The notes under the pieces: generated by a model | The model's input: the letters and a program-made list of their open reading frames with translations, nothing else | What the model was told of the DNA's origin: nothing | Databases searched by the model: none | Position numbers and translations under genes: made by a program | NCBI RefSeq assembly: GCF_001194135.2 | Contig: NC_068987.1 | Span: 24,836,360-24,900,359, forward strand | Direction of reading: 5' to 3' | DNA: 64,000 nt | Origin: Octopus bimaculoides | Taxonomy: Eukaryota | Shown: positions 9,591 through 54,037 of the stretch, one piece after another | Layout of the letters: each line of letters starts with the position of its first letter | How positions within the stretch are numbered: the stretch's first letter is position 1

Positions 9591-9591
<1 letters not shown>
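8570..9591 (+). mobile_element. Internally deleted Helitron (Rep N-terminal zinc-finger region + 3' hairpin-CTAG terminus)
   Basis: CNFCKALKFPNETNGM(C)CSGGKV.LP...PPQPL..LL and FKVQGQVYHLIGSLL...QPQFLQIYF are Helitron RepHel N-terminal motifs; ends cctgagcaatgctgtg...tctgCTAG|T at 9591. Confidence 0.85.
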
Positions 9592-9632
<41 letters not shown>

Positions 9633-14112: not shown

Positions 14113-14269
14113 TTACCCTATAATAGAAGAAGAAAATTTCTCTGTGTCTTCATTTGGTACTAATTGCGTCAGCACATTCTGTAAGCAATTTGTGGCTTCC
14201 AGTAAACCAAATTTTGCAAGGTATCTTCGTTTCCAACTCGTACGAAAGTTCTCAATCAGTTCCAGCAGT
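14113..14269 (-). CDS. Exon 22 (terminal coding): LLELIENFRTSWKRRYLAKFGLLEATNCLQNVLTQLVPNEDTEKFSSSIIG*
   Basis: tttatctttgcAG|A, then open frame to TAA at 14113-14115; 157 nt. Confidence 0.88.
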
Positions 14270-16941: not shown

Positions 16942-16972
<31 letters not shown>

Positions 16973-19900: not shown

Positions 19901-22900
19901 CAAAGCCAGAGCAATTTTGAGTGGGGTTAGTTTAGCTAATTATGTTGACCCCAGTACTTGACTGGTACTTTATTTTATCAACTCTGAAAGCAAATCTGAC
20001 TTTGATAGGATTTGAACTCAGAATGTAAAGAGCTGGAGTACATACTACAACACAGTTTTTTCAAACTCTAATGATTCTGCCAACAGACATTAATGGGTTA
20101 CAAAGCAATGCAAATAACGACTCAGACTATAGGTAAGTGGCTATTAGGCCAAGACAAAAATGGATCTCTCAGACACACTTCTTAAATTATGAACTGTTAT
20201 GATACTTGCCGTACTGCCAGGATCATCATATCTGTTGTGAGAAGCACCTCAGAAATGATTTCCTTTGATTGTGGGCAATTCAATTGGATGCTTGTTACAT
20301 CAGATTGGTGCTTCCGTAGAAGGCGGTTGGCTCGCTTCAATGAGATAACAGAAAACAAATTGTATTATAGTACTGAAATAGTTTTGAATTAAGAGACACA
20401 AAAATTATTATTTGTGTGTGTATTTGTCTATATATAACATACATAGAAGTGGATAACTGAATACAATTAATGAACAACGAAATTGAAACATAATCTTGTA
20501 TATGCTGAGGCACACCTATTTATTTAAAAGGGAAAATGTGAACAATTATATAGGTGCAGGCATGACTGTATAGTAAGAAGTTTGCTTCCCAACCACACAA
20601 GGCTTTGGTTGACAATAATATAAGGCTAAAATTCTTCAAGCTGGTGTCCCAGCATGGTCACAGTCTAATGACTGAAACAAGAAAAAAATAAAAAGATATA
20701 TAAAATGAGTTTTTTTTTCAGTCTTGATGTACCAAATCCACTCACAAGGCTTTGGTTGACATTGGAGTTATAGTAGAGTGTGTTTGCTCAATGCACCCTG
20801 CAATGGGACTGAACCCCATATCACATGGCTGGGAAGCAAACTTCTTGTATGTTGTTATTGTCTTTACGTTGTCACCATGTGGGCACAGCGATATTAGATT
20901 ACATCCCTCATTAACAAAATATCCAATTCAGTAGTGTAATGTGAAGAAGGGCACCTGAAGACAGAATATTGCTTCAAGATGACTCGATCAAGTCATGCAC
21001 TGGATCAAACCAGGAACAATATGTTAGAGCAGTGAACTTCTAAACCACAGAACCATGTCTGTGCTTGTATATAAACATCAAAATCTATAAGTATTGTACA
21101 TAGATAACTAAAGCAACATTATTTCTTAGACAGTACAGCCACAGCAAGAACTGTTCATCAAATGTCTTATTTAGCTTATTTTAGATTTTGTTATGCCATA
21201 GGTCAATTAAAATAGATTTGACAAAGACTATATATGATGTCAGCAATACATAAAGACTGAATGTAAAATCTAAAATTACAGGAATCTGATATGGGTCTGT
21301 GTTGGCAACAAGTAATACAAAGGAAATGTGGTAATAACTAAAATTAAATGCTGTTGTAATGAGGAAAGGCACTCTACAGGTGTTTCAAGCAGAGGCTCTT
21401 TACCAAGAAAGAGACAGGAAAAGTTCTGTTGGCTATTATAAAGACTTCATGGTAGTTATGGAGGAAGGAAATGGATATGTATGTAGGTTTGTGATTTCTA
21501 AGTAGAAGATATGTTAGTGTCTGGGTATATGGGTATGTGAGAATATCAAGGAAGGACGAGTACTGTATGTACCTATATACATAAGTCAGAGGGTAAGGAC
21601 TTGAGATAATATAAAGGTTGCTGATGCTACAGGACAGCATAAAAAGACTGAAGTGTTAAACTAATCCCTTACCTGTAGAATATCTGATGTTAAGTCTTCT
21701 AATCTTGTTTCATCAGGTCGTATAAGGAAACTAGTAAGAGTGGAGCCATTTTCACAAGGAAGAGAGGTTTGGTCATCATCTAAAAAAGAAGAGATAAAGA
21801 GGTCATCAAAAGAGCATATAGTAGGCATAAAAAAGGTGCAGTGGAGATGGATATAGTTGAATAACTGTACACAAGGAGAGAGAGCAGTGATATTTCTCTT
21901 TGGGATACATTGGAAAAAATGCAGAAAGTAGGCTAAATAAAATTTTTGAGGACTGCTGAAGTTGTAAAGAAAAAAACAAGTAAGATTTGTTGTTTTCAAT
22001 ATCCTAGTAAAATAATTATTTTTTCAGTATGTAAAGTAAATTCAGATATCCTAGTAAAGTGTGTGGGTGTGTAAGACTACCCTTACATAAAACTACTATC
22101 CACCACAAGTAGTTCTTTATCAAAGCTCTAACAAACCTGTTGCACAAAAAAGAAGAAAAAAGAAAAAAAGGGAATAATTAGAAGTATTGGAATCAGAAAT
22201 AAAATTACTAAACAATTTTCAAGAAGAGCAACAGCAGACAAATAACAAAAGCAAAAGGAGCAAAAAAGAAATGTAATAAACTTAATACAATTGGTGACAC
22301 TGTATTGATGAAAACAGTGAGTTGACAACACATCAAGACTTCATAATGCTGCTTTTCCCTTCCACGGAGGGAATAACAAATTAACACTCATTTGTCACTT
22401 GTGGTCACCATAAAATATTTTTGTTTCAATATAAGAATTTAATAGCATCAACCAAACAGGAACTAAAAATCACACACCATTATCTTTGACAGGAACTAGC
22501 TTCCTACCTGGTTTCTTTTGGGAACATCGATAGATGTAGGTCTCAATTCTTCCCAACTCAATGATAACTTGTCCAAAAACAGAAGAATCATCACGAAATA
22601 TATGTTTGTTCATAAGTTCTGCCAGATGGCTGTGAAGAAACTCCTGAAATAAGAATGAGATCTGAAATAAGAATGAGATCCATATAATCTGTAATAGGCA
22701 CAGGCATGGCTGTGCAGTGAGAAGCTTGCTTCTGAACTACATGGTTTTAGGTTCAGTCTTACTGCACGGCACCTTGGACAAGTGTCTTCTACTATAGTCT
22801 TGGGCTGACCAAACCCTTGTGAGTGGATTTGGTAGACAGAAACTGAAAGAAACTCATTGTATGTGTATGTGTGTGAGTGTGTTCATGTCTGTTTTTGTCC

Positions 22901-24885: not shown

Positions 24886-25749
24886 AATATATGAGTATAT
24901 GCATATATATGTACATGTATGTATATACGTTCATCCACATGTACATATAGATACATAACTGGGTACACGATGGGCTTCTTTCAGTTTCCATCTACCAAAT
25001 CCACTCACAAGGCTTTGGCCGGCCCGAGACTATAGTAGAAGACACTTGCCCAAGATGCCACGCAGTGGGACTGAACCCGGAGCCATGTGGTTGGTAAGCA
25101 AGCTACTTACTAAACAGCCACTCCTGCGCCTATATCTCTAAAATTTCTAGGTAGTAAGAATCAGAATATATGGAGAAGATAAAAAAAAGGGTGTTAGATG
25201 TGTCTTATATTACTATTAACTTACCCAGTGTATATCCTTGTTCCAGGCGAGGCCAGCAGTGACGACAAAACCAGGCCAACAAAATGGCGAGTGAGTGAGG
25301 AAGCTGCTACCAGACCAATGGCATACCAATAGACCAAGGCCTGACTGGCTTGAGGCACACTTTGCAGCATTAAATATATTGGCAACAGCTGCCTCTGGGA
25401 AGCCAGCCAGACTGTTCCAGGCTGCAGTGCCTGGACAGATGAAGAAACCAAACCTAAAATCAAAATGGAATTGGAAAATGTATATGCTTGTGACTTTAAG
25501 TCCAATGTGTACACACACACACACTTATGTATATATATATATGTACTTAAATATATATATATATATATATATATATAGTTCAAATTTACAGAAAACAAAT
25601 AAAAACTGGTGAGGAAACAACAAGCAGGTGTAGTTTGCTGCTTGGGAAGAAGGGAAAAGTCTTTGACAATTTGAGCCTATGCCCTTTGACAGAAATGGTT
25701 GAGAGTAGAAAAACAGAAGAAGAAAAAAATGTGTAGGGATTAATGGTTC

Positions 25750-25781
<32 letters not shown>

Positions 25782-26704
25782 NNNNNNNNNNNNNNNNNNN
25801 NNNNNNNNNNNNNNNNNNNNNNNNNNNNNNNNNNNNNNNNNNNNNNNNNNNNNNNNNNNNNNNNNNNNNNNNNNNNNNNNNNNNNNNNNNNNNNNNNNNN
25901 NNNNNNNNNNNNNNNNNNNNNNNNNNNNNNNNNNNNNNNNNNNNNNNNNNNNNNNNNNNNNNNNNNNNNNNNNNNNNNNNNNNNNNNNNNNNNNNNNNNN
26001 NNNNNNNNNNNNNNNNNNNNNNNNNNNNNNNNNNNNNNNNNNNNNNNNNNNNNNNNNNNNNNNNNNNNNNNNNNNNNNNNNNNNNNNNNNNNNNNNNNNN
26101 NNNNNNNNNNNNNNNNNNNNNNNNNNNNNNNNNNNNNNNNNNNNNNNNNNNNNNNNNNNNNNNNNNNNNNNNNNNNNNNNNNNNNNNNNNNNNNNNNNNN
26201 NNNNNNNNNNNNNNNNNNNNNNNNNNNNNNNNNNNNNNNNNNNNNNNNNNNNNNNNNNNNNNNNNNNNNNNNNNNNNNNNNNNNNNNNNNNNNNNNNNNN
26301 NNNNNNNNNNNNNNNNNNNNNNNNNNNNNNNNNNNNNNNNNNNNNNNNNNNNNNNNNNNNNNNNNNNNNNNNNNNNNNNNNNNNNNNNNNNNNNNNNNNN
26401 NNNNNNNNNNNNNNNNNNNNNNNNNNNNNNNNNNNNNNNNNNNNNNNNNNNNNNNNNNNNNNNNNNNNNNNNNNNNNNNNNNNNNNNNNNNNNNNNNNNN
26501 NNNNNNNNNNNNNNNNNNNNNNNNNNNNNNNNNNNNNNNNNNNNNNNNNNNNNNNNNNNNNNNNNNNNNNNNNNNNNNNNNNNNNNNNNNNNNNNNNNNN
26601 NNNNNNNNNNNNNNNNNNNNNNNNNNNNNNNNNNNNNNNNNNNNNNNNNNNNNNNNNNNNNNNNNNNNNNNNNNNNNNNNNNNNNNNNNNNNNNNNNNNN
26701 NNNN

Positions 26705-26737
<33 letters not shown>

Positions 26738-27561
26738 AGGTGCAGTGAATAAACTGTCGTCTAAGTTATGCAAAAATGAAAAAAACACTGACATCTCATT
26801 TTAACAGATATATTTACCAAAATTACATAAAAATATCTTGAAATGCTGAAGAGTAAATTTATTCAATAAAACTGCCAATGGTCTCAACCAGGCCCTCCAG
26901 ACAACTCTTCTGGACAGTCTTCTTGTTTAAGTTGGTGAATGCTACCATAATCCTTGCTTTCAGTTCATCTTTGGTGTTGCAAGGAGTTTTGTTGATGTCT
27001 AATTCAACTGCACCCACACATAATAATCAAGGAGGTTGTAGTCTGGGAAATTAGGTGGCCAGATGTTAGGAGTGATGTGGTGGCAGAAATTGTCTGATAG
27101 CCATAACTGGGTTCTCCTGCTTGTGTGGCACGGTGCAGAGTCCTGTTGTCAGACATAGGGTCTTCCAGCAACCACTCTCTTGACCCATGGCAGCACTACC
27201 TCCTCCAGGCACCCGATGTGGGCCTCCGTGTTGAGTCTGAGGCCATGTGGGAAGATGAATGGCAGCATAATGTCCCATCACTAGCGATCACTCCAAACAC
27301 CATGATGTTGACTGGATGTTTGATTTTTTTCACTCTCAGTACATATCCTGAGACTGACACTCAAACACTCTGAAATGTTTGTATTGGGGGTTCTGGTATG
27401 AATGCCAAACAGTACATTACATTGTTTTCAAATTTCTAGCAGAGTGAATTGCATCATGGTGCCCAACTGACCCTACTATACTGTATAGTCGACAAAATCG
27501 AAAACAAATGATGCGTACGCATGAAATTAAAAATATAAAATGGTGACAATTTACCCATCAC

Positions 27562-27600
<39 letters not shown>

Positions 27601-30600
27601 CTTGTTATTAACAATTTTCAGGAAGGCAAAAAACCATGTCATGCACAGTATATCTACCCAACTCAAAACTGCCTTAGCAAGACTGTGTAACCCATGCCAG
27701 TATGTTAAAGTAGACTTAAAATGGTGATATATATCTACATTCATGTTTATCTGTGTGTGTATGTGCTATTGTGAAGATTGTGGCACAAGTGAGTCAAAAG
27801 ACCCAGTTTTCACTGATATGACAATGCTAATAACGAAATTTGTTATTTAAATAAAAATGAAGAAAAATAATGAAAGTAACCTTAGGTGAATAGAGAAAAA
27901 GAAAAACTGCTGCGTTTGATATTTCTTGTTTAATTATTACTAAATGGAAAACGAAAAACTTTAAGTAGAAGGTTAAAATAGTAGCAAACTGTTATGATGT
28001 GTGTGTCTAGAGAAGAGACAGCAAAGATGTGACATTTGAACCAACCAATGCATTGTTGATAGACCACAAGCTGATCACAATTATTAATTTGTGTTTAATT
28101 TATACAGAAATTTGTGACATCCCAAACCTGTGAGATGCCAGAACAACAAAGGTAAAAATTATATGAATATAGAACTTACCCATATTCAGAAAGGCGCTTG
28201 CAGTGGGGCACAAAATTATGGGTGGCCTATGAAAGAAGAAAACAATTGCTTTTTTTGTTGTTGTTTATTACCCAGAAGAAATTAATTTTCATGTTGTAAA
28301 ACTTAAACAAGAACACAAATATAATTTTGGGGAATTTTATATCAGCTTTATAGATGAAATAATTTCCAATATTTACATGTATACAAGGAGGTGAGCTGGC
28401 AGAATCCTTAGCACGCCAAATAAAATACTTAGTGTCATTTAGTCTGTCTTTATGTTCGAGGTCTACTTTGCCATTCATCCTTTTTTTGGGGGGGGGGGTC
28501 AATGAAATAAGTACTTGGGGTCGATGAAATAAGCACTGGGGTTGATCTAATCAAATTAACCCTTCCCTGAAATTGCTGGCCTTGTGCCAAAATTTGATAG
28601 CAATATTTACATCTATACAACATTTCAATTGGTTTGATCTCTTATCATGTGATGCCTTGTTCAAGAAGAAGATTGAAGATGACATGAGATGTGGTGAAGG
28701 CTCATCTCAGGAGGTTGAATCACATAAAGGCAATGACAGAGAATCTGTATAAGGTATGTGTGTATGTATGTGGGTGTCTTTGTGCCAGTGTTTGTTCCCC
28801 ACCACTGCTTGACGACCAGTGTTAGTGTGTTTATGTCTATGTAACTTAGCAGTTCGGTAAATGCGACCAATATGATAAAGTACCAGGCTTGGAAAAAACC
28901 AAAAAATATTTTATATAAATCTTGGTGTCAATTAGATAGACTAAAATTTTCTCAAGGTGGAGTCCCAGCATGGCCACAGTCTAATGACTGAAACAAGTAA
29001 AAGATAAAGATGATCCTTGTTACACAACATTGCAAATATAATGAATAATGATAGACCAAATGGAAACCTGCCACCAATGACATTATTGTTCACAAAATGC
29101 ATTATTAAATAAAATAAAACCTGACATACAATTGAACTGTACCAGTGTATGACTGGTACACAGTTTATCAACTCTTGTGTGATAGAGAGATGAATCTACC
29201 TTAAAAGGATCTGAACTGCGAATATAAGGGGCCAATACTGAAATATTTACCCTGGCACTCAACTGTCTCTGTCAACTCATAGGGGATGAATGAAACTAAA
29301 TAAAATCCACTTAGCTGTCTTACCTGTGTTCCATACTCACCAAACATTAAGTGTGGTGGTAGTCGTTGTATCAAATGTTGTTTTACATCATGGAGAGTTG
29401 AGCCACTTATCAACAAAGTCTTGTCTTTTATTGGAAGAAATTTGCTAGCATCTGCAATGCTCAAAGTGTCATCATCAGGATATTCCAAGAGAAAACTAGT
29501 AAGACGGGATCCTACATTAATAAAGCTGTAGATGAGATAAAGATTACAAACGTTATGTTAAATCCATTTCATTACGCTCTTTTTCTCTTTCTCTCTCTCT
29601 CCGTATATATACAGGGTGCGATGGGTAAATTGTCACCATTTTATATTTTTAATTTTGCACATGTGCATTATTTTTGATTTTGTCAACTACACAGTATAGT
29701 AGGGTCAGTTGGGCACCATCTATGAGAAAAAGAGTGCCATGATGCAATTCACTCTGCCAGAAATTTGGAAATGACATGCTGTACTGCTTGGCATTCGTGC
29801 CAGAAGCTCCAATATGAACATTTCAGTGTTTGAGTGTCAATATGAGGACAACACAGAGGATTTGGAAAGAGTTGGCGATGATGAAGGTATGGAACGGTAA
29901 TGATGAAGGTATGGCAGCTTGGAAAACTCACTCTGATCCTTCTGATAAGAAAGGAAATCCTGAATTTGTTGGTGAGATTCAGGCCATGATTGACAATGAT
30001 TCCTCCAAGTCAATCAGATCCATCACCAGGGACATGGGAGTGTCTGAGTTTCTTATCAGGCAGACAGTGCTTGAAGACATTTGGTATTCCTCATACAAGA
30101 TGAGAAAGAGTCAATTTTTATTCCAAGTCACTAAAGATAAGAGGAAAGACTGTGCTATGAAGATTTTGAACAAACTCAAGCATCCCTGCCAACCTAACAT
30201 GTTTTGTTTTTCTCAGACGAGAAAAACTTCTGCTAGGATCAAATGGTGAACACATAGAACAATTGTTGGCTTGCTGTGTCCTCAAGACATGTACCAAGAG
30301 TGATAAAAATCAAGTCAACATCATGGTGTTTGGAGTGATCACTAGTAATAGCGATGTTATGCCTCCATTCATTTTCCCACATGGCCTCAGACTCAACACA
30401 GAGGCCTACATCAAGTGCCTGGAGGAGGTAGTGCTGCCCTGGATCAAGAGGGTGGCTGCTGGAAGACCCCATGTCTGGCAACAGGACTCTGCACCATGCT
30501 ACACCAGCAAGAGAGCCCAGTCATGGCTGTCAGACAATTTCTGTGACCACATCACCTCTAACATCTGGCCACCTAACTCTCCAGACTGCAAACCCCTTGA

Positions 30601-31009
30601 TTATTATGTGTGGGGTGCAGTTGAGTGAGAGACCAACAAAACTACTTGTAATACCAAAGAAGGTAAAGGTTATGGCAGCATTCACCAACTTAAACAAGAA
30701 GACTGTCTAGAGGAGTTGCAGGAGATTCCAAAGTCATCTGGAGGCTGTGGTTGAAGCCAATGGCTATTTTATTGAATAGATTTACTCTTTAGTATTTCAA
30801 GATATTTTTATGTAATTTTGGTAAATATAATTGTTAAAATGAGATGTCAGCGTTATTTTGGTTTTTGCGTAATTTAGATGACAGTTTATTCACCATACCC
30901 TGTATGTATGTATGTAGATGTATATATATNNNNNNNNNNNNNNNNNNNNNNNNNNNNNNNNNNNNNNNNNNNNNNNNNNNNNNNNNNNNNNNNNNNNNNN
31001 NNNNNNNNN

Positions 31010-31044
<35 letters not shown>

Positions 31045-34000
31045 TATGTGACAGTGGATTTTCATCGATGAGTTCATGAACCTTGGTTCTTTTCCCTAAA
31101 ACTATATATATATATGTAAATGATTTCACTTAGGCATTGCGTGACTAATAATCTGGTGTAGAACTCAATATATGTATGCTACAGAATGAAGTGTTAGGCA
31201 AGTATAGAATGTTAATAAGAAAATAAGATGACAAAGAAAAAAAAAAACAGTTATGTTATGAAATTCATTAGCTTACAGCTGTTTCTTCTATAAGATGCAG
31301 TGGACTCATAGATGAGTGCCTGAATAACATCCTATAGCTTCATCAACCTTAAATAAGAAGTAAAAATTCTTTGGGAAAAAGAATTACATTTGTGTAATAT
31401 ACTTGTCACTGCTAATGCCTTCCCTACACACACATACATCTATACTATATATAAAACAGAGATGTGTGTGTAATCGCTTTTCACGTGAAATCGACTTCAC
31501 CAAATGCTTCCATACTTGTAATGCATGAATAATTTGACCTCGGATAAATCTTAGGCTCTTCATTTGATTTTTTTAATTAAAAATAAATAATATTGCTTTA
31601 TATTTAAGATTCATTTCTTTAAAAAGGTTCCTCAATGTCAACTTCCGGTATTGACGTAACAACCGCAAAAAGCTTCACTCTCTATTTTGTGTGTTTGTGT
31701 GTATGAGAGAGAGATAGAGTAAATACTACATACACACCGCTCTCTCACTCTGTCTCACACACATACACACGCACACACATACCCCTTGACTCANNNNNNN
31801 NNNNNNNNNNNNNNNNNNNNNNNNNNNNNNNNNNNNNNNNNNNNNNNNNNNNNNNNNNNNNNNNNNNNNNNNNNNNNNNNNNNNNNNNNNNNNNNNNNNN
31901 NNNNNNNNNNNNNNNNNNNNNNNNNNNNNNNNNNNNNNNNNNNNNNNNNNNNNNNNNNNNNNNNNNNNNNNNNNNNNNNNNNNNNNNNNNNNNNNNNNNN
32001 NNNNNNNNNNNNNNNNNNNNNNNNNNNNNAAAGACACACGTGTGTATGCGCGCGTGCGTGGGGGGGTTCCACAATCGCCATTTATTTCAATTACTCTTCT
32101 GAGGATATTCACGTAAATCATTTTTTTCATTTAATCCCCATTTTAATTTTCGTAAAAGTTTCCAAGTACCAATGAGGCTTTTTGGCACATCTTCAATTTT
32201 CCCCATTCATGAGAGGCGCCCAGCCATCATTCATCTGAGAGTCCATCTACAGAATGTCCTCAAATTTCTATGCAGCATATTTTGCTTTTTTTTCTTCAAG
32301 TATATAAGCAACAATTTCATTCCCGAGCAACGCCGGGTGCCTCTGCTAGTATATATATATATATATAAAGAGAAGCATTATATAAATATACACACACACA
32401 CATGTACACATAATGCATACATTGTTAAATATACCTTGCATTTCCTCACTGTTGATGATATTTTCAAGGTCTTTTCATTCATGTTGTTGATGCTTCCCCT
32501 TTTATCTTGAGATCAATAATCAGTTACTAAATCATCAAAGATAGTCCTTGTCTCAGAAGTCATCATTGAACTCTTTCTCTTCTTCTGGCTCTTCAGCTTC
32601 TTTACATAAATGTGACCTGCAGCAATAGCTCCTTTTCCACATGCTTGTCTCCAGTTCTTATAGCCTTCAGCAACCTTTTCCCAGTTGTTAGGTTCGATAT
32701 TAAAATAAAAGACTGATCTTGATGCACTCATTGAGCAGTGACCTTCAATAATTTCAGAGTAAAGGATCATTTGTTTGGGATACTTGTGTATGGCATCCTT
32801 TATACATGCCTGAACCATTGAAGTGAATGTTCTCCAGTGATGGTTAAGTTTCTCATTAATTTTGTTCTAGTCAGTATAGTGTTGTTTGTGACAGTCATCC
32901 CATTTGATGCTTGGGATCAGTCGTAACTTTGCTAGATGAAATCACTTATGTCATAGTGTTGAGTGTTTATACACTGTCCATGTCTCACAACAGAAACATC
33001 TGAAGAGCACAAAAGCCCAATAAATAATAACTTTTGCTTCATATCTCAAGTTATGACTGAGAGATACTTTGTGAGAAATGTCCAAAGGATTTGTAGGCTA
33101 TTTGCTGTTGTTTGGTGATGTCAACTTCAAGGGGGTAGAAGTTGGACAAGATGCTGAGAGGTGAGTGATAAAACTAGTTTGCCAATTATAGTAATTTAAA
33201 GAGGTTTGTTTTTTTGCCTTTTTATAAATTCCACTCCATGGATATGTCATTCCTCTTGAGATATATCTTTCCAGAAGAAAGTATAACTGAGACAAATTTC
33301 TGCTATTTAAACTTTGTTTGCTAGTCTGGTTTCAGCAATTGCAGTGACATCAAGGGTGAACCTTGTCAGCTGTTGGGCAAACAGAGCAGTTCAGTGTTCC
33401 TGTCTGTTGATGATTCTCTTGTCTTGCAGAGTTTGAATGCTCCATGTTAAAGTGAGTAAAGGAACAGATCAATCTTTTGAATGGTTGTGATAACAAAATG
33501 GATAACCTACCAAATATGTTTATCCAGTTATAGGAGGTAGGCACAAGATGATTTTAGACCATCCTTTCTAGATCCATCTTTAGTGTGGAGTGGGAGCACC
33601 TTCTTTAAATATGTTTACTCCATCATGAAAGCAGCCGCCAAATTCAGGTGTTCTCCCCAATTCATCTTAAAGACAACCTTCACACCTTCCAATGCCAAAG
33701 TATCTAGTTGTAACTGAACATGATCACCATTAGACTTTGGCAGATGAATTGAAACCCAATGGTCATTTGCTAGCAAGTTTGATCAGAGCAGAGAAAGAGT
33801 TGTGAGTTTGATTTCCACAATGCCTGGACTTTAAGGCCTCTCTATCCACAGTACAACTGCACTGAGATGATAGAAGTCCTGTCCAATAACAGAGAGATGC
33901 CAGTGCTGCAGACTATCATGGTGGATTTGCCTTCATGCTTTCTTTTAGTGTCTGAATGGCAACGACAACTTGTGCTTCCATTTTAACAGTTCTTACTTTT

Positions 34001-37000
34001 AGAACTGTTGGGATTCCTCAAACATTCCTCAGGAGTGAACTCGAGACTGATGGCTTAGTCACCACTGACACTGTCCTGAAATGGACAGTGCAACATGTTA
34101 TACCAGACACCCACAAATGTGTGTATATACACACACACACACACACACACACATGTATATCATACTGTTGTTATAATATGAATATATGTATACATAGAAA
34201 ACATTCAAAATATATTTAATAAACCTATATTCAGTCTCATTAAGAATATATAGTATATGGAGAAATCACAAAATCTTTGACAGCTGAGAATAAGAATAAT
34301 TTGATTAATTTCATCAGAGCTATGAACATAAAACAATTAAACAAATGTGTAAACATTAATGAAATGTGGTTACTTACTCTGAATTAGTAAAATGTGAGAT
34401 GTAGTCATAAAATACACATTGCAAGAATGGCAAATCTTCAAATTGGACAGACGGATGAACATCAACTGCTGGAATCAATTGCATGCCTCGATCCATGCAG
34501 AACTTATCAATCTCCAACAGCTCACTGCAATAGGTAACAATTCATGTTATAAACATTGATATTATGTACAACATCTTACTGAAGGAAAGACTCAAAAGTA
34601 TAAGCAAAACAGAAATTTACTACTACTACTACTACTATTGCTATCCCCACTGAGCTGGTAGAATCATTAGAGTGTCAAGAAAAATACCTTGCAGTATTTC
34701 TTTTGACTCTAATTTCTAAGTTCAAATCCTACCGAATCCAATGTTATCTTTTATCCTTCTGAATTGAGAAAATAAAGCACTAAGGTTAATGTTATCAACT
34801 AACCCCATTCCAAATTACTGATCTTGTACCTAATTTACAATTATGACCTTCACAGTGTTTGTATCTAGTCCATTCCCATAACTGTAGGAGTGGTCTGTAC
34901 ATTGAATTGGTTGCAGTCATATATTTAACCCATTAGCATTTAAACTGGCCACATCTAGTCCAAATATTCTGTTTTATGTTTAAATTGCCTTCTCGGACCT
35001 ACACTACAATGTCATTCTAAAAATAAACAATAACATCATCAAACTGTTGATGCCATGGAATAATGCATAATTAATTCAAAATGAGCTGAATAAATTAGCA
35101 TTATACTTGACAGAGTAATCAGAATACTAATAGGTTAAACCAGCTTTTTGTAAGTTTTAAATGTTCTCAGCTTTTACAATTTGTTTTTTTTCCTCTCAAA
35201 TTGCAAAGCAAGAGTTATAAGCAATTACAGCATGAAAGAGCCATTTTAGCTGTCTAGAAGCACACTAAAAACTGCTGAATTCATTTTTAATTTATTTATT
35301 GTGAAGAGTCAAAATTACATTGCACATCTGCAGTAAAACTGTCAGTAACCAGGTCACAGTGCTGCAAACAAAAATTCTGGCACCCAACAAAATAAACAAA
35401 AATAGTGAATATGGTAGTTTTTGTATGTCCTTGTATGGTTGCAATGTAATTAGTGGAGGTGCAATGGCCCAGTGGTTAGGGCAGCGGACGCATGGTCATA
35501 GGATCGCGGTTTCGATTCCCAGACCAGGCGTTGTGAGTGTTTATTGAGCGAAAACACCTAAAGAAGCTCCACGAGGGTCTGGCAGGGGATGGTGGCGAAC
35601 CTTGCTGTACTCTTTCACCACAACTTTCTCTCACTCTTACTTCCTATTTCTGTTGTACCTGTATTTCAAAGAGCCAGCCTTGTCACACTGTGTCACGCTG
35701 AATATCCCCGAGAACTACGTTAAGGGTACACGTGTCTGTGGAGTGCTCAGCCACTTGCACGTTAATTTCACGAGCAGGCTGTTCCGTTGATCAGATCAAC
35801 TGGAACCCTCGACATCGTAAGCGACGGAGTGCCAACAACAACAATGTAATTAATTCATTTTCAACGCAGGGTCTCAAATCAAAGTCACAAGCCAAACGTG
35901 AACAACAAAGAGCAAGTTAATGGTGGTTTGTAGCATTCTTATGTTTCACTTTTCATACTGTATTTTCTGGCATACATGTTGACATAGTATAAGGTATAAG
36001 CATGTAGTGTAAACTTTCAAACATCATCACTATCTTTCTCATCCTGCTGCATTTCATATAGAAATTTTGGTCTTCCAATGCTGTGTTGACCAACCTTCTT
36101 TTTTGGCTGTAAATTTTGGTCTGCAAAATTTGACCTGTGTGCCAGAAAATATAGTAGTTGCAGAGAGTAAATCAGAAATCGAAGGCAGAGTTATTCTAAA
36201 TCTGCTTCAGTAGATATATTTAACAAAGTATATACTCTTTTTACTCTTTTACTTGTTTCAGTCTTTTTGACTGTGGCCATGCTGGAGCACCACCTTTAGT
36301 CGAGCAAATCGACCCCAGGACTTATTCTTTGGAAGCCTAGTACTTATTCTATCAGGCTCTTTTGCCGAACTGCTAAGTTACGGGGACGTAAACACACCAG
36401 CATCAGTTGTCAAGCGACATTGGGGGGACAAACAGAGACACACAAACACATACATATATATACATATACATATATATGAGGGGCTTCTTTCAGTTTCCGT
36501 CTACCAAATCCACTTACAAGGCTTTGGTCGGCCCGAGGCTATAGTAGAAGACACTTGCCCAAGATGACATGCAGTGGGATTGAACCCGGAACCATGTGGT
36601 TGGTAAGCAAGCTACTTACCACACAGCTGTGGCTTTGTGGTTAGAGTATTCATGAGCTTAATTCCCTGCAGTACATTGTGTCCTTGAGCAAGACACTTTA
36701 TTTCATGTTGCTCAAGCCTACTAAATTGGCAAAAATGAGTTGTACCTGCAATTCAAAGGGTCAGCTTGGCCACATTCTGTGCTATGCAGAATCATCCTGA
36801 GAACTACATTAAGGGTATGTGTGTCTGTGACATGCTCAGCTATTTGAATGTTAATTTTATGAGCAGGATGGTTTCTTGATTGGATCAACTGGAACACTCA
36901 CCATTGTAACTGACAGATTGCCAGTTATCAAAAGAGAAAGCAGTACCCATAACGCTGTACAGGGTTTCTGAAGCTGCTAGGAGGGAAGGAAGAAGGTATC

Positions 37001-40000
37001 CATGAACAGGAGACCAGTCCTGAGTGCTTGCAGCAAAGTTGACTCTACTAAAAGCACCCAAGGTTATAAACTGGTTGTGCTAAACCAAGTGATTGATTAA
37101 ATCTACCATGCAAGAGCACCATGGCAGGATTTGAACACTGACTGCAAAAGAAGCTTAACAAATAGAACAAGACATCTAGTCTGATATTCTTACATTTCTG
37201 CCACACAGCACTCAACTTGTACTTCTTTCTTATCAACTCTGAAGGAATGAAAGGCAAAGTTGATCTAGGTGGGATTTGAAACCACAATGCGAAAAGTCAG
37301 AATAAATATTGCGAAGTACTAAGAACTTGTTATCTTAAAAGGGATTCAAGATCGAACCTGTTCGTTCTAGTTGTTACATTCCAGGTCAGTCCTAATTAAG
37401 CAGACATGTGATCAAAGACATTTAAACTGGGGCCATTACTGTCTTTTGTTCAGTCAGTGGGCATTCAAATTTGCATTATTCGATGTTCCTCTCTTAAGAT
37501 TACTATGGTGTAGTCATAACGAGGTTTGGCTGCTATTTCTAGCAAGTTTGGCAACCAAAAAGAGGCTCTCTCATTGGTTCATATTGTGTTTGGTAGAAGC
37601 ATGTAAGATGGTGGGGGGATGTTGTAAAGGTTATTATATTATACTAGCTGGCCCCATGCCGTCAAAAATGATAGCTAATTGTATTATATATATCAGATGC
37701 AAAATTATCACAGATACAAACATTCACATACTTCCCTTGTACATGCACACACAAATACTCACACAGAGTTGAAATGCTGTTTGATGTTTCTGTTCAGTTT
37801 TGAATGTCCACCATCCTACTTCCATTGCATGCACATACACACACACAACTTCCTTTTACATACACACACACACATACTCACACAAAGTTGAAACGCTGTT
37901 TGATTTTTGTTTCACCGTAGAACTTCCATCATCCCACTACCAAATTTGCCATCACCCCTTCCTTTCTCATTCATATGTTGTGACGGAGAAATACACAAGA
38001 GTATTATTATAGTGGATACACACCTACAGCTGTAGCACAACTGCCATGTTGAACTGGTCTGATACCGGAATCGAGTGTACAAATGTATCTGAAGAGAAAA
38101 TGAAATATGGAAGAGAAAGCAACAACAGTAGCACTACTACTACTACTACTACTACTTGTAGCTCACTTATTCTTTTAAGGGTAGAGAGGCCCCTTTGAGT
38201 CTTTTCAGGTAAATGGTATTTTGATAAAAATACTGATGGCCATGACACCTTACCACTTTCCTCAGTATGAGATTAATGAATAAAAGAATTATACAAACAA
38301 CAGCCTAAATAACAATAAAACTTCAGGTGATGGACTCTCAACTGGCAAGTGTCCCGTGGGTGAACAGCACAGGCCCAGTTATCACTATAATCACTATACA
38401 GCTGCCAGAACAAGATTGTCTAAAGCAATAAATATAGCTGCCATCTATATACTCTTAAAAGTGAAGTTCAATCTTGCTTGCTTGCTTGCAATGTTACACA
38501 GCCAAACTGGTGCATAATGGGAAAATATTTTGAAAGTAAAATGCTCCTGAAATGTGAATATGAATGGAATAAAACAAGTTTCGCGTAAATCGGACCAGTA
38601 TTTATTGAGATATTCGGGGTTTTGGGGTATAAATAATAATGGGAAAATATTCCGAAAATAACTTCATTCATTAGACATTATGATAGGCAAAATATTTTTA
38701 AGTGAAAATGACTTTAAAAATATGGTAAATATTTTGAAAAAGACCTGTTCATAACCTTAATGTGAAATAGTCTTTTTCCATTGGTTTCTTTCGAGTGCAT
38801 TCAACATATCTCCCCCTCCAAAAATTTGGCTGCTATTTCTAGCACGCCCTGCTACTATGTAACAGCTATTTGTGATAAACGACCTGAAATACCTGCTACG
38901 TTGTAGCAGGGTGTGCAAGAAATAGCAGCCAAATCTTTCCTTTTCTGGGGAAAGGAGCTGGTTATGCGTGGTTTTTGATGTCATATTTGTTGAAAGCATG
39001 TGAAATAACATGGGGGAAAAAAAGAAACTCACAAAACAAAACTCTGTTGCTGGGAAACTCAGACTTTCCTGGTGACCCAACGGGTCACGAGTAGTCTAGT
39101 GGAATGTTATTTTGTGAGCAGACCCATTGATGGTGAAGGGAAGCTGATAGGAAAATATAGAAACTGAATGCATGGTGTCTGGATGGAGATGCAGGACTCA
39201 GATGTTATGGAACTGAGATGCCGCCAATGCCAACAACAACAAAATATAAACCTGTTCCTATAATCTTTAAGAAATATCAATCAATCAATTAAATGTGCAA
39301 ATAGATGAAAAATTGAAGCAATGTCAGGAAATTTTGGCATGCAAGATAAACAGAAACAAGAAAAAGTTTATGAAAATGAATAATTCATGGTACCTGATTA
39401 AACTTCATGAAAGCAATATTGTCAAGCATGTTTTTCAGAGTTTCCTGTAACAGACAAAAGAACATATTGTACAAAGCTGTCTAATTTTTTTTTGGGGGGG
39501 GGGAGAGGGACTAAATAATTCAGCAGAATAAACAAATCATTTCTTTAAAACAAACCAAAATAATAAAAAAAAAAAAAAGAAAAAAGAAAAAAAGAACTAT
39601 TTGCTTCTTTGGTATTTGACATTGACAGAATGGTGAACTTAATGCCATGCCATGATGCCCAAGATCTCTTGGTATTCTTGGTTCAAAACTTCCCAAGTCA
39701 ACTTTACCTTTAATCATTTCAGAGTAGATAAATTAAAGTACCAGTCACGTATAGGAGTCAATTCAACTGTCTGTACTCGGGTGCTGTACTCTAGTTAGAA
39801 ATGGTTGTGATAATATATTTTATTGTTATTTAACCCCAGGTCAACCCTAGGCAGTGTGTGTCTTTTTTAAAGACATTTGGCTGTCTTATTTTTACCATCT
39901 TAAGTGACTATGCAGAAGCTTCAATACCTGCCTGTGCTATTATTGTTGGTTTCTTTGTCTCTGCTGAGATGCACTAGCAGGATGATGCTCAGTGACATGT

Positions 40001-42826
40001 AATGACATCTGATAGTCTGGTTGGTCATGTAATATATTCAGTTACATAATTAAAGAGGGAGAGAGAGAGATGAATTGAAACTTACTATATTAGGTACACG
40101 TCCTTTAGATACATCAAGTAGAACTCCTCTGTAAGGCAGCGATGGTGAATCTGTAATCTAAGCAAAGAAAATGACAATATTCAGGGCAATAACATATACT
40201 GATTAGTTTGTTTTAGCCATAGAGGCTATGACCATGTTGGAATACTTCCCTTCATAATATGTGATATTGCTGTTTTTTTTTTTACGAGGAATAAATTAAC
40301 TGCATCTGTGAATTAAGATTTTCTATATAAAATGAAAATAAACATTAATGGTAGCAAATCTGGGACTGGGTTTGTTTCACCATTCTGTCCTGGGTATGAA
40401 TTTAAACTGCATTTGGTAGTCGGGCTTTAGTTTGGGAGTTGTAAGGTTTTGAGGAGTGTGACCACTTCTCAGCCACTATTGTTTCTAAGTCTGCTCTGAC
40501 TTGGAGTAGTAGCATCTGTCTAGGTCTCAACTATAACTTAAATAGCATGTAACCACTTAAGCCAGGGTATGTTGAAATCATGGGATGCAGCATGGTGGAA
40601 GTGAATTATTTTGGCAGATGAACATACTAAATCAATGGCGAATATCACTGATGCTGAGTGGATGAACAGACAACAAACTGTTAACCATCAGGTTCAACTA
40701 GTTCAGTTGTTAGCAAACTGCTGCTATCGTCTGTAGTCATGGCATGAGCAGAAGTGTTATTTTAACTAGTGAAAGACCAATGTGACTAAAACACACACCA
40801 GACATTCATGCTTCATCTCTCAACTGGGATTTCTGGGATGGAAGTTGCTTGACTTGATTAACTGACTGTAATCAAAAACAAATGCCCTGTGTTTCAAATA
40901 ATTATGACCTCTTCAGTGCAGAAGTTATAAGAAAATCTCTAAGTAAATGCATGAAAACACACTTGTTGGCAGGGGAACAGAGAAAAAAATGAATTACTTT
41001 TAGATGCTATCTGTATGAAATAACAATAGTTAAGTTAATGTTAATCTACTTAGTACATGGAGAATTATATCTATCTATGTACTGAAATTCGACACAGGAT
41101 ATTGCTGCTGTTGCTCTGGTTGTTGTTGTTTACCCCGCATCATCTATGATAAATCAGGCCAATGATCAAAGCCATTCTGACCCAAATCGTTTTGACTTTC
41201 TATAATTTTGAAACATATGATATGCCCTTCTTTCTTTTAAGTAGGATATAGCTTCAAGGAGCTGTGGGTAGTAGTTTCTAGCAGGCTGAGTAACTGCATA
41301 AATACCACCTTGCTTGTTAGAATACAAGAAATCAATAGTTAATAAACTACACATTTCAGAAGGGATAATTAAGTAACTGACCATCACTCTCTAGTTTCTA
41401 TTTACCTGTATGTCATAATCATAACTATCATCATCATTAAATGTCCAGCTTCCATGCTGACATGGGTCGGACAATTAAATAGGATCTGATGAACCAGGGG
41501 GCTGTGTTAGTCTTCAATGCTTGCTTTTACATAGTTCCTATTACTGGATGCCCATCCTAATGCCAAACACTTTACAGTGTATACTGGGTCCCTTTTTCAT
41601 GGAATTGGCATTATTGGGGTCACCAAGTAACTCACAAGACAAGCCCACTTGACTGAGTGGGGTGGGGGCAGTAAGTATATACCAGAGACAATAGAAATCA
41701 GCAAATGGGGCACATGCAAGTAGGGGACTCACACAGATACGAGCAATTAACTAAAACGATAAAGAAACAATTAATTCATAGTAAACAACTATGTTCATTG
41801 GCAAATTGGTGACATAAACTTGGTTCCTTGAAAACAAAACAACAATATTTTAGCACTCACAGATCGTGCCAAAATTTTACTGTGAAAAGAACAAAAAGCA
41901 AAAACTTACTTCTAATAATGGGATACTGATGCCTGATTCTGTTTTGTATAAATTGAACAACTGGCTTAATGTAATAATTGCATAAGAAAGACTTTGGATA
42001 TCATGAGCCAGGATTTTGACCTACAAAAGAAAAGAGAAAGCTGAATATGTCATCATCATTTAACATCCGTTGTCCATGCTAGCATGGGTTGGGTGGTTTG
42101 AGTGGGCTGGCATGGTGGAAGGCATGTAAAAGTAAGCACCAAGCTCCAGTCTGATTCGGCATGGTTTTCTACAGTTGGATGCCCTTCCTAATGCCAACCA
42201 CTCTGAGAGTGTAATGGGTGCTTTTATGTGCCACCGGCACAGGTGCCATTTGCGTGACACTGGTATCTGTCATGACTGTGATTTTGCTTGGCTTGATGGG
42301 TCTTCTTCTCAAGCACAACATAATGCCAAACGCCTTGGTCGTTACCACTTTGATAATTATTAAAATTGAAATAATAATAATGGTTTCAAATTTTGACACA
42401 AGGCCAGCAATTTCTGGGGGCAGGGGTTAGTTGATTAGATCAACTCCATGTCTCAACTGGTAATTATTTAATTCCTAGAGAAAGGATAAAGGCAAAGTTG
42501 ACCTTGGAGGAATTTGAACTCAGAACATAAAGATGGACGAAATACCACTAAGCATTTTGCCTGCTGTGTTAACAAGTCTGCCAGTTTGCTGCCTCAATAA
42601 TAATAATAATCCTTTCTACTATAGGCCCCAAACTTGAAATTTTGGGGGAGGGGGATAAGACAATTATATCAACCCTAGTGCGTAACTGGTACTTATTTCA
42701 TTGACCCCGAAAGGATGAAAGGCAAAGGTGACCTTGGCAGAATTTGAACTCAGAATGTAGCATGAGATGAAATACCGCTAAGCATTTCTCCCAGCGTGCT
42801 CACGATTCTGTCAGCTTGCTGCCTTT

Positions 42827-42857
<31 letters not shown>

Positions 42858-53736: not shown

Positions 53737-53769
<33 letters not shown>

Positions 53770-54001
53770 TAGAGAGATAGAGAGAGAGCAAGCATAGAGT
53801 GGTCAGTGGGTTAGATATGTAGTCTAATAATAGAGATTTACTTAAGAGAGATACAAGCATACAAATACAGTGAGAGAGTGAAAAAGAAAAAGCATATGAA
53901 GTCATCACTGTGATAGATACAGAGACACATAGTAGAGGGATTCACTAGATACATAAAAACAGAATGAGGGAGAGAGAGATGGGGAAGGAAGAGAGAGATA
54001 T

Positions 54002-54037
<36 letters not shown>

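What the first reader, a model, noticed from the sequence alone, without database searches (positions are those of the whole stretch)
25225..34524. GH20 active site looks dismantled: probable pseudoenzyme with intact ORF
Established: GH20 enzymes use an adjacent Asp-Glu pair in H-x-G-G/C-D-E and an upstream P-G-H / F-G-H motif. Seen: the positionally equivalent strands read LIPAVDVHP (no GH) and FINVGSRL (Ser-Arg instead of Asp-Glu). The segment between them is only about 30 aa. The strand equivalent to bacterial/HEXDC 'T.WGD' reads CHWSG. The ORF has no stops or frameshifts, which suggests a retained function. Inference: a catalytically dead lectin-like reader or scaffold rather than a pseudogene.
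Basis: partly seen in the sequence, partly recalled or inferred. Interest (0 to 1): 0.72.

Follow-up and report, generated by a model that had tools for sequence, protein, structure and literature searches.

The report
Conserved catalytically dead GH20-like gene
The region holds four exons of an intact octopus gene for an ankyrin-repeat protein whose hexosaminidase-like (GH20) domain has lost its catalytic residues in all 39 bilaterian orthologues examined, while two of three choanoflagellate orthologues keep them: an old, unstudied pseudoenzyme family, not a decaying gene.

Summary
Its reading as a "pseudoenzyme, not pseudogene" holds, with corrections.

- **Gene structure.** The span 25225-34524 is not one ORF. 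It holds exons 14-17 of a minus-strand gene of at least 22 exons (window 60585-14113); exon 1 lies outside the window.
- **Gaps.** All three N gaps are intronic. Every exon maps without indels to a gap-free Octopus sinensis locus.
- **Protein.** It has ankyrin repeats, a GH20b domain, a GH20-like barrel and a helical domain III. A structure model of the 94%-identical O. sinensis orthologue best matches the GH20 enzymes GcnA and GH20C.
- **Lost residues.** Against intact bacterial and choanoflagellate relatives (hhalign E 4.7e-80), the catalytic Asp-Glu is Arg-Leu, not Ser-Arg. The G-H histidine, the β5 Trp and the β8 Asp are also gone.
- **Kept residues.** The β1 Arg and the β7 and β8 Trp remain.
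- **Distribution.** All 39 bilaterian orthologues lack the pair. Six cnidarians keep Asp but not Glu. Two of three choanoflagellates keep everything.
- **Selection.** dN/dS against O. sinensis is 0.22 in the barrel.

Most likely it is a non-catalytic binding or scaffold module. Glycan binding is untested. No paper on this family was found.

The parts
60506..60585 (-). Exon 2. It begins the ankyrin region (..SEVKDLQTVLNESCSDDGTLLHLATM). Exon 1, about 32 aa, lies upstream outside the window.
   Evidence: tblastn with the Argonauta orthologue; AG/GT splice sites; 96% identical to O. sinensis L001 13311-13390; exon 1 gives no hit in the window.
49894..56324 (-). Exons 3-6 (56324-56170, 54206-54076, 53629-53494, 50006-49894), encoding the ankyrin repeats.
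   Evidence: Pfam Ank_2 E 3.8e-32; orthology; splice sites and phases; O. sinensis mapping.
47395..47555 (-). Exon 7, a poorly conserved linker.
   Evidence: The orthologue's linker (residues 228-304) is modelled as disordered, pLDDT below 50; this exon has the lowest nucleotide identity to O. sinensis, 89%.
41910..45582 (-). Exons 8-10 (45582-45423, 44741-44557, 42020-41910), encoding the GH20b-like N-terminal domain (LWPRPQ ... PLLE).
   Evidence: Pfam PF02838 scores 21.1 bits, below its 26.1 cut-off; the family profile aligns to the GH20b domains of solved GH20 enzymes, E 1.9e-19.
40086..40157 (-). Exon 11: barrel strand β1, ITDSPSLPYRGVLLDVSKGRVPNI. The substrate-binding Arg (codon 40130-40128) is retained.
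   Evidence: the Arg is present in 39 of 39 bilaterian and all intact sequences.
38024..39444 (-). Exons 12 and 13 (39444-39394, 38088-38024): α1 and strand β2. The motif reads LYTRF where intact enzymes read LY-x-E-H, so Glu became Arg (codon 38073-38071).
   Evidence: Found by alignment to orthologues; the β2 acid is Arg or Lys in 32 of 39 bilaterians.
34378..34524 (-). Exon 14: strand β3, LIPAVDVHP (34452-34478). The N-S-[FL]-G-H motif and the following loop are deleted.
   Evidence: the His position is a gap in 39 of 39 bilaterians.
29324..29525 (-). Exon 15: strands β4-β6. G-S-R-L replaces G-x-D-E (Arg-Leu codons 29506-29501); LISGS replaces MFWGD; GEYG replaces EWGY.
28180..28226 (-). 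Exon 16, ATHNFVPHCKRLSEYG.
   Evidence: Phase mismatch noted; exon found; splice sites; 96% identical to O. sinensis.
25225..25453 (-). Exon 17: strands β7-β8. CPGTAAWNS is retained. CHWSG (25309-25323) replaces TDWGD, so the Trp is kept and the Asp is lost.
14113..22643 (-). Exons 18-22 (22643-22508, 21779-21673, 20334-20210, 15542-15426, 14269-14113 including the stop): helical domain III, with the eukaryote-specific motif ..NLGITNLTATGKTDLANRLL. Exon 20 has a GC donor.
   Evidence: the GC donor is conserved in O. sinensis; domain III aligns to bacterial relatives and to GcnA/GH20C; motif conservation.
25782..26704 (.). Assembly gap (923 N) inside intron 16, flanked by TA/CA microsatellites and next to a mariner-like insertion.
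   Evidence: O. sinensis has only about 230 bp between the flanking matches and no exon there.
30930..32029 (.). Two assembly gaps (30930-31009 and 31794-32029) inside intron 14.
   Evidence: The flanks are colinear with gap-free O. sinensis L001 41582-43295. Exon 14 to exon 15 splicing is phase-compatible (GA + C = Asp).

Best explanation
**What it is.** The finding covers exons 14-17 of the octopus orthologue of LOC115214018. This is an intact protein-coding gene of about 926 aa and at least 22 exons.

**Domain order.**
- N-terminal ankyrin repeats.
- A disordered linker.
- A GH20b domain.
- A GH20-type (β/α)8 barrel.
- An α-helical domain III.

The last three domains match the architecture of the bacterial GH20 enzymes GcnA and GH20C.

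**History (shown by comparison).**
- The fusion of ankyrin repeats with this GH20 type predates animals.
- Two of three choanoflagellate orthologues keep every catalytic motif.
- The six cnidarians examined have lost the acid/base Glu, the G-H His and the β8 Asp.
- The 39 bilaterians examined have additionally replaced the Asp with Arg (in most), deleted the β3-β4 loop and lost the β5 Trp.

**Function (inferred).**
- The barrel can no longer carry out substrate-assisted hexosaminide hydrolysis.
- The protein survives as a pseudoenzyme under purifying selection.
- It most likely acts as a cytosolic (no signal peptide), non-catalytic binding or scaffolding module.
- The ankyrin repeats would recruit protein partners.
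- The still strongly conserved β7-β8 face (CPGTAAWNSLAGCPEAA, DWSG-x-GH) and the domain III motif (TDLANRLL) would provide a binding or dimerisation surface.
- What it binds is unknown.
For: **Gene model.**
- 21 exons, all AG/GT except one GC donor, give an uninterrupted 894-codon frame ending in a stop.
- Every exon aligns full-length and without indels to a gap-free O. sinensis locus.
- The model is 94.4% identical to the annotated O. sinensis protein P0157.

**Homology to GH20.**
- The profile of 12 sequences (window model plus 11 bilaterian orthologues) against the bacterial enzyme profile gives probability 100%, E 4.7e-80, over 556 columns spanning all three domains.
- The profile against PDB hits GH20 structures at E 1.9e-19.
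- The AlphaFold model of P0157 has mean pLDDT 83.8.
- Its best Foldseek matches are GcnA 2epn and GH20C 5a6j, E about 5e-18, target-normalised TM-score 0.63-0.66, about 650 aligned columns.

**Dead site, counts over 39 bilaterian sequences.**
- Catalytic Asp is present in 0 of 39; Arg takes its place in 25.
- Catalytic Glu is present in 0 of 39; 38 have Leu and 1 has Ile.
- The β3 His position is deleted in all 39.
- β5 Trp is present in 0 of 39 and β8 Asp in 0 of 39.
- All these positions are conserved in 15 to 17 of the 17 bacterial relatives.
- No conserved replacement acid follows β4.
- Pfam PF00728 matches only 36 of 348 positions and scores 21.8, below its 22.3 cut-off. It passes in the choanoflagellate and coral orthologues.

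**Stepwise loss.**

**Selection and expression.**
- dN/dS against O. sinensis is 0.37 overall and 0.22 in the barrel.
- Identity is 38-48% to chiton and amphioxus orthologues.
- Orthologues occur as intron-free contigs of about 3 kb in sequencing-run assemblies, which are probably transcripts.
Against: - No activity or binding data exist for any member.
- The model's coordinates could not be inspected. It is therefore not shown that no other acidic side chain reaches the pocket; for example Glu in the conserved CPEAA, or the semi-conserved Asp/Glu six residues after the Arg.
- The dN/dS estimate rests on few substitutions (12 synonymous, 10 non-synonymous in the barrel).
- The high conservation of the β7-β8 remnant of the pocket could mean retained ligand binding rather than pure scaffolding.
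- Some databases auto-name coral and cuttlefish members "beta-N-acetylhexosaminidase".
Confidence: 0.78

Rival explanations
1. It is a neofunctionalised pocket. The barrel still binds a small ligand or glycan, but a different one. Two acids of the old site became basic residues (β2 Glu to Arg/Lys, β4 Asp to Arg) beside the retained β1 Arg. The pocket could therefore now bind an anionic group such as a sulfated or phosphorylated sugar, a nucleotide sugar or an acidic peptide, or support a different chemistry.
For: - The β2 position is Arg or Lys in 32 of 39 bilaterians and the β4 position is Arg in 25 of 39.
- The β1 Arg, β7 Trp and β8 Trp are kept.
- Exon 17, which encodes the β7-β8 loops, was conserved enough (45-75% identity to full-length orthologues in other phyla) for this single exon to retrieve the family.
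- Bilaterians have newly fixed residues around the site: Pro and Glu in CPEAA, and Gly in WSG.
Against: - The two Arg positions are not invariant. Asn, Val, Cys, Ala, Gln and Thr occur at β4; Gln, Ile, Met and His occur at β2. That is unusual for essential ligand contacts.
- No structure coordinates or ligand data are available.
Confidence: 0.15
2. It is still a hexosaminidase, or another glycosidase, using non-canonical catalytic residues.
For: - The GH20 fold and the substrate-binding β1 Arg are retained.
- Some acidic residues are conserved nearby in sequence: Glu in CPEAA in 86% of bilaterians, and Asp, Asn or His before the β8 Trp.
- Database auto-annotations call some members hexosaminidase.
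Against: - All parts of the canonical machinery are missing together: the Asp-Glu pair, the β2 acid and β3 His that support the Asp, the β5 Trp and the β8 Asp.
- Leu at the acid/base position is nearly invariant.
- No conserved substitute acid follows β4.
- Pfam's catalytic-domain model no longer recognises the barrel.
Confidence: 0.05
3. It is a pseudogene or an assembly artefact. Either the catalytic motif sits on an exon hidden in the N gaps, or the locus is decaying.
Against: - All gaps are intronic and colinear with a gap-free O. sinensis locus.
- The O. sinensis, Argonauta and cuttlefish proteins have the same residues and no extra segment.
- The frame and the splice sites are intact.
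- dN/dS is below 1.
Confidence: 0.02

Closest known systems
GcnA (Streptococcus gordonii, PDB 2epk/2epn) and GH20C (S. pneumoniae, PDB 5a69/5a6j): GH20 β-N-acetylhexosaminidases with GH20b, barrel and helical domain III
   Same: - Same three-domain architecture and fold: best Foldseek hits, about 650 aligned columns.
- Uncharacterised bacterial proteins of about 620 aa align with the animal family over the whole length, E 4.7e-80. One of them (P0044) has these two enzymes as its closest solved relatives.
- The β1 Arg, the CPGT-x-x-WNS motif and the β8 Trp are shared.
   Different: - The animal protein has N-terminal ankyrin repeats and no Asp-Glu pair, no G-H His, no β5 Trp and no β8 Asp. The β8 Asp corresponds to GcnA Asp376, one of the two conserved subsite -1 residues named in PMC4449183.
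- It also has a deleted β3-β4 loop and an extra conserved loop in domain III.
Choanoflagellate ankyrin-GH20 proteins (Salpingoeca kvevrii EP00050_P001010; S. urceolata EP00051_P002509)
   Same: Same full architecture including the ankyrin repeats and the TDLANRL motif of domain III. They are orthologous by full-length alignment.
   Different: They keep every catalytic motif (NS/CFGH, GLDET, FWAD, EWGYE, TDWGD) and pass Pfam PF00728, so they are presumably active enzymes. They are uncharacterised too.
Catalytically inactive glycosidase homologues, for example GH18 chitinase-like lectins (own knowledge, not tested here)
   Same: A glycoside-hydrolase fold is kept under selection after loss of the catalytic acid, which is also replaced by Leu in some chi-lectins.
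   Different: - It is a different family (GH20), intracellular by sequence, and fused to ankyrin repeats.
- Erosion goes well beyond the acid and removes several sugar-contacting residues, so retained lectin activity cannot be assumed.
- No GH20 pseudoenzyme was found in the literature searched.
   Same: From my own knowledge: a nucleocytoplasmic GH20 without a signal peptide, with a W-x-x-D-type β8 motif.
   Different: From my own knowledge: HEXDC has no GH20b domain and no ankyrin repeats, and it retains G-H and D-E. It was not compared directly here because no HEXDC sequence was retrieved with the tools.

Membership tests
GH20 (CAZy glycoside hydrolase family 20) | Catalytic (β/α)8 barrel homologous to GH20 | tested here: met
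   - hhalign against intact bacterial GH20 relatives: probability 100%, E 4.7e-80.
- Foldseek to GcnA/GH20C: E 5e-18, target-normalised TM-score 0.63-0.66.
- Profile against PDB GH20 chains: E 1.9e-19, but only through β3.
GH20 (CAZy glycoside hydrolase family 20) | Adjacent Asp-Glu at the end of β4 (H/N-x-G-x-D-E): Asp orients the 2-acetamido nucleophile and Glu is the acid/base | tested here: not met
   The window reads N-V-G-S-R-L. Asp is present in 0 of 39 and Glu in 0 of 39 bilaterian orthologues, against 17 of 17 bacterial relatives.
GH20 (CAZy glycoside hydrolase family 20) | His of the x-G-H motif after β3 and the acidic residue of β2 that support the catalytic Asp | tested here: not met
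   The His position is deleted in 39 of 39. The β2 Glu is Arg in the window, and Arg or Lys in 32 of 39.
GH20 (CAZy glycoside hydrolase family 20) | Subsite -1 binding residues: β1 Arg, aromatic residues of β5, β6, β7 and β8, and the β8 Asp/Glu | tested here: inconclusive
   - Kept: β1 Arg in 39 of 39, β7 Trp in 34 of 39, β8 Trp in 36 of 39.
- Lost: β5 Trp (Ser in octopus, Cys in most others), β6 Trp changed to Tyr, β8 Asp changed to Gly.
GH20 (CAZy glycoside hydrolase family 20) | Pfam PF00728 (catalytic domain) and PF02838 (GH20b) above their gathering scores | tested here: not met
   - PF00728 scores 21.8 against a cut-off of 22.3 and covers 36 of 348 positions.
- PF02838 scores 21.1 against a cut-off of 26.1.
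- The choanoflagellate and coral orthologues both pass PF00728; PF02838 is passed by the coral (41.9) and narrowly missed by the choanoflagellate (25.9).
GH20 (CAZy glycoside hydrolase family 20) | β-N-acetylhexosaminidase activity | not testable with these tools
   This needs an enzyme assay.
GcnA/GH20C-type architecture (GH20b, GH20, helical domain III) | All three domains present in this order | tested here: met
   The Foldseek alignment covers about 650 columns of targets of about 620 residues. hhalign covers columns 6-605. The architecture is as described in PMC4449183.
Pseudoenzyme (conserved inactive homologue of an enzyme) | Clear homology to an enzyme family, key catalytic residues missing across orthologues, and evidence of purifying selection | tested here: met
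   - Homology.
- Loss in 39 of 39 bilaterians.
- dN/dS 0.22-0.37.
- Conservation from cnidarians to amphioxus.
Pseudoenzyme (conserved inactive homologue of an enzyme) | Demonstrated lack of the ancestral activity | not testable with these tools
   No biochemical data were found in the literature searches.
Pseudogene | Disabling stops, frameshifts or broken splice sites, with neutral evolution | tested here: not met
   The frame is intact over 894 codons. Splice sites are canonical, with one conserved GC donor. dN/dS is below 1.

The most novel reading that the evidence does not exclude
A cytosolic ankyrin-GH20 hexosaminidase was present in the common ancestor of choanoflagellates and animals. 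It was converted before the cnidarian-bilaterian split into a non-catalytic module. Its remodelled pocket is now basic (β2 Glu to Arg/Lys, β4 Asp to Arg, next to the retained β1 Arg and two Trp) and reads a new, possibly anionic, glycan or metabolite. The ankyrin repeats couple that reading to protein partners. This would be a previously unrecognised class of intracellular "reader", widespread in invertebrates. No vertebrate orthologue appeared in the hit lists examined.
Probability: 0.2. Interest if true: 0.8.

Novelty: new variant of a known kind. Interest (0 to 1): 0.6.

Why it matters
- Pseudoenzymes derived from glycosidases are known in other families. I found none described for GH20, and none fused to ankyrin repeats.
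- This family is widespread among animals: cnidarians, molluscs, annelids, nemerteans, priapulids, arthropods, nematodes, echinoderms and amphioxus.
- Databases label its members only "uncharacterized", "tankyrase" or, probably wrongly, "beta-N-acetylhexosaminidase".
- Presumably active choanoflagellate orthologues, half-eroded cnidarian ones and fully eroded bilaterian ones form a natural series. That series could show how an enzyme becomes a non-catalytic module around the origin of animals.
- It also supplies ready controls for biochemical tests.
- Practically, the result corrects annotation and warns against counting these genes as hexosaminidases in CAZyme inventories.

Tried and rejected
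- **Word-indexed search with hand-joined exons.** It found nothing although orthologues exist. An exhaustive HMMER search with the single exon 17 solved this.
- **Spliced protein as a query.** The structure was therefore predicted for the 94%-identical O. sinensis orthologue.
- **Direct exon 15 to exon 17 splicing.** This was rejected on reading phase. An alternative internal acceptor (tccag|GC) was considered, then dropped when exon 16 was found.
- **β2 exon thought absent.** It was then located as two small exons by alignment to orthologues.
- **Single-sequence searches.** Pfam and PDB searches of the octopus sequence gave only marginal GH20 hits. Profiles were needed.
- **Alternative acid after β4.** This was rejected because the position is not conserved.
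- **Literature searches.** Searches for ankyrin plus GH20, and for GH20 pseudoenzymes, returned nothing relevant.
- **Intronic transposase-like ORFs on the plus strand.** Pfam gave no hit.
- **A stray promoter/terminator scan.** It was uninformative, being a bacterial-type tool applied to a eukaryotic locus.
- **Pocket geometry.** It could not be examined because model coordinates are not exposed.
Full report
**What the window is.** They therefore belong to separate exons, not to one ORF.

**Gene model**

- Reading the splice sites showed that the finding's borders are a genuine acceptor (34524) and a genuine donor (25225).
- The exon with LIPAVDVHP (34524-34378) joins in phase to the exon with FINVGSRL (29525-29324).
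- That exon cannot join in phase to the exon with CHWSG (25453-25225). This predicted a missing exon.
- A word-indexed protein search with hand-joined exons found nothing.
- An exhaustive HMMER search with the single 76-aa exon 17 found 400 relatives. They included proteins of about 900-950 aa from many invertebrate phyla.
- tblastn with the Argonauta hians orthologue located 19 exons in order on the minus strand from 60585 to 14113. One of them is the predicted small exon, 28226-28180 (ATHNFVPHCKRLSEYG).
- The poorly conserved linker exon 7 had been defined from splice sites. One β2 exon was found by peptide alignment.
- With exact borders, 21 exons give an uninterrupted 894-codon frame ending in a stop. 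All have AG acceptors; the 20 donors are GT except one GC.
- Exon 1 (about 32 aa) is not in the window. The window's upstream end maps inside intron 1 of the O. sinensis gene.

**Gaps**

- The protein model is 94.4% identical to Octopus sinensis LOC115214018 (P0157, 926 aa). The window therefore comes from a close relative of that species.
- The O. sinensis locus (L001, no N) was fetched.
- All 21 exons align to it full-length, without indels, in the same order, at 89-100% identity. The same splice dinucleotides are present, including the GC donor.
- The flanks of the three gaps are colinear with L001.
- Gap 30930-31009 corresponds to about 10 bp at a microsatellite.
- Gap 31794-32029 lies in a stretch of about 750 bp of intron 14.
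- Gap 25782-26704 lies in intron 16, next to a mariner-like insertion that O. sinensis lacks.
- No coding sequence is hidden in any gap.

**What the protein is**

- The N-terminal exons encode ankyrin repeats (Pfam Ank_2, E 3.8e-32).
- Taken alone, the remainder is barely recognisable. PF00728 scores 21.8 against a cut-off of 22.3 and covers only 36 of 348 positions. PF02838 scores 21.1 against a cut-off of 26.1.
- A profile of 12 sequences (the window model plus 11 bilaterian orthologues) hits solved GH20 enzymes at E 1.9e-19. The match covers only the GH20b domain and strands β1-β3.
- The same profile aligns with a profile of uncharacterised bacterial "family 20 glycosylhydrolase" proteins of about 620 aa. 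Probability is 100%, E 4.7e-80, over 556 columns covering GH20b, the barrel and a C-terminal helical domain.
- One of those bacterial proteins (P0044) has GcnA (2epk) and GH20C (5a69) as its closest solved relatives.
- An AlphaFold2 model of P0157, built with a 29-sequence family alignment, is confident: mean pLDDT 83.8, with only the linker 228-304 disordered.
- Its best Foldseek matches are GcnA and GH20C: E about 5e-18, target-normalised TM-score 0.63-0.66, about 650 aligned columns.
- This is the GH20b-GH20-domain III architecture described in PMC4449183.
- The N-terminus (MSLNEITEGLRKAVESGRTD...) is hydrophilic. By direct reading there is no signal peptide, so the protein is presumably cytosolic or nuclear.

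**State of the active site.** A 60-sequence alignment shows each barrel motif unambiguously, because the flanking residues are conserved. The table compares the intact bacterial relatives and two choanoflagellates with the octopus sequence and with the 39 bilaterian sequences examined.

| Strand | Intact relatives | Octopus | Across 39 bilaterians |
|---|---|---|---|
| β1 | R-G-x-M-L-D | YRGVLLD | Arg kept in 39 |
| β2 | L-Y-x-E-H | LYTRF | Glu is Arg or Lys in 32 |
| β3 | N-S-[FL]-G-H | VDVHP | His position deleted in 39 |
| β4 | G-[LCG]-D-E | G-S-R-L | Asp in 0 (Arg in 25); Glu in 0 (Leu 38, Ile 1) |
| β5 | F-W-G-D | ISGS | Trp in 0 |
| β6 | E-W-G-Y-E | GEYG | Trp is Tyr in 35 |
| β7 | CPGTSxWNS | CPGTAAWNS | Trp kept in 34 |
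| β8 | T-D-W-G-D | CHWSG | Trp kept in 36; Asp in 0 |

The pair is Arg-Leu. hhalign agrees on Asp to Arg and places the Glu in a deletion.
- The 25-aa distance between β3 and β4 is a real deletion shared by all the bilaterians examined.
- A semi-conserved acidic residue six positions after the Arg is not conserved enough to serve as a substitute catalyst.

**Evolution**

- Source names identify the orthologues. They come from cephalopods, chiton, gastropods, bivalves, annelids, a nemertean, a priapulid, chelicerates, insects, a crustacean, filarial nematodes, echinoderms and amphioxus. Six cnidarians (five stony corals and Nematostella) and three choanoflagellates also have the gene.
- Salpingoeca kvevrii and S. 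urceolata have the ankyrin repeats and every catalytic motif. They pass PF00728. Diaphanoeca grandis is partly degenerate.
- All six cnidarians keep the long β3-β4 loop, the β4 Asp and the β5 Trp. They have Glu changed to Leu, Lys, Met or Val, G-H changed to G-F, and β8 G-D changed to S-L.
- The ankyrin-GH20 fusion therefore predates animals. The acid/base was lost no later than the cnidarian-bilaterian ancestor, or in parallel. Erosion continued in Bilateria.
- No vertebrate orthologue appeared among full-length hits. This is an observation from the lists, not a dedicated test.

**Selection and expression**

- Nei-Gojobori dN/dS between the window and O. sinensis was computed by region.

| Region | dN/dS |
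|---|---|
| Whole gene | 0.37 |
| GH20b | 0.23 |
| Barrel | 0.22 |
| Domain III | 0.29 |
| Ankyrin plus linker | 0.75 |

- Counts are small. However, 38-48% identity to chiton and amphioxus orthologues over about 880 residues points the same way.
- Many orthologues are represented by contigs of about 3 kb holding the complete ORF without introns. These are probably assembled transcripts.

**Interpretation**

- Shown: an intact, conserved gene; a GH20 fold of the GcnA/GH20C type; and complete absence of the canonical catalytic machinery across the Bilateria examined.
- Inferred: no hexosaminidase activity, and a non-catalytic role.
- Several sugar-contacting residues are gone as well. Simple retention of GlcNAc binding, as in a chi-lectin-like "reader", is therefore not the default expectation.
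- Yet the β7-β8 face and a eukaryote-specific loop in domain III are the most conserved parts. Some binding surface is evidently maintained.
- The replacement of two acids by basic residues suggests a changed, possibly anionic, ligand. Because those positions vary, I rate this a minority reading.
- No publication on this family or on GH20 pseudoenzymes was found.

**Verdict.** The finding is real. It is corrected in its details: four exons, Arg-Leu, intronic gaps, and GcnA-type rather than HEXDC-type. It is a new variant of a known kind (a pseudo-glycosidase), of moderate to good interest.

Noticed in passing
window 29830-30628 (+) and about 27360-26860 (-): There are two mariner/Tc1-like transposase remnants in opposite orientation, in introns 14 and 16. 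Both carry ...QQDSAPC[HY]TS...NIWPPNSPD... The minus-strand copy adjoins the 923-N gap and is absent from the orthologous O. sinensis intron. Pfam gave no hit for the plus-strand ORFs, so the classification rests on my reading.
   Followed up: partly
window 58426-57722 (-): A run of ORFs in intron 2 looks like the N-terminal helix-turn-helix part and the start of the catalytic part of a mariner-type transposase. It is interrupted by a stop. Pfam gives only a weak HTH_11 hit.
   Followed up: partly
window 20209-20208 (-), donor of exon 20: This intron has a GC-AG splice pair (CG|gcaagt). The GC donor is conserved in O. sinensis, and the orthologue protein length fits only this donor.
   Followed up: yes
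window about 36640-36500, 25137-24990, 53147-52960, 6305-6156, 20787-20640 (-), among others: A short interspersed repeat occurs many times in the introns. Its translation reads ..SSLLTNHMVPGSVPL.. / ..LAYQPHGSGF.PTA... Parts of it also match elsewhere in the O. sinensis locus.
   Followed up: no
all seven N gaps (5652-6084, 25782-26704, 30930-31009, 31794-32029, 51325-51837, 57460-57652, 61508-61852): Every gap whose flanks I read abuts TA or CA/GT microsatellite sequence (flanks translate as YIYIYI or CVCVCV). The gaps therefore look like unresolved simple repeats rather than missing unique sequence.
   Followed up: partly
proteins P0270-P0273, P0289, P0164, P0172, P0007 (database names): Orthologues are auto-named "beta-N-acetylhexosaminidase" (corals, cuttlefish) or "Tankyrase-1/2" (scallop, ant, cricket, sea spider). 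Both names are probably wrong for a protein with ankyrin repeats and a dead GH20 barrel.
   Followed up: partly
protein P0005 (Nucella lapillus): This protein has a tandem duplication of the dead motif segment (FVSCGPRLSSFLLDA FVSCGPRLSSFLLDT). It is probably a gene-model or assembly artefact.
   Followed up: no
window 1-14000: The region downstream of the gene's stop codon was not analysed. Only low-complexity and repeat-like ORFs were seen in the ORF lists.
   Followed up: no
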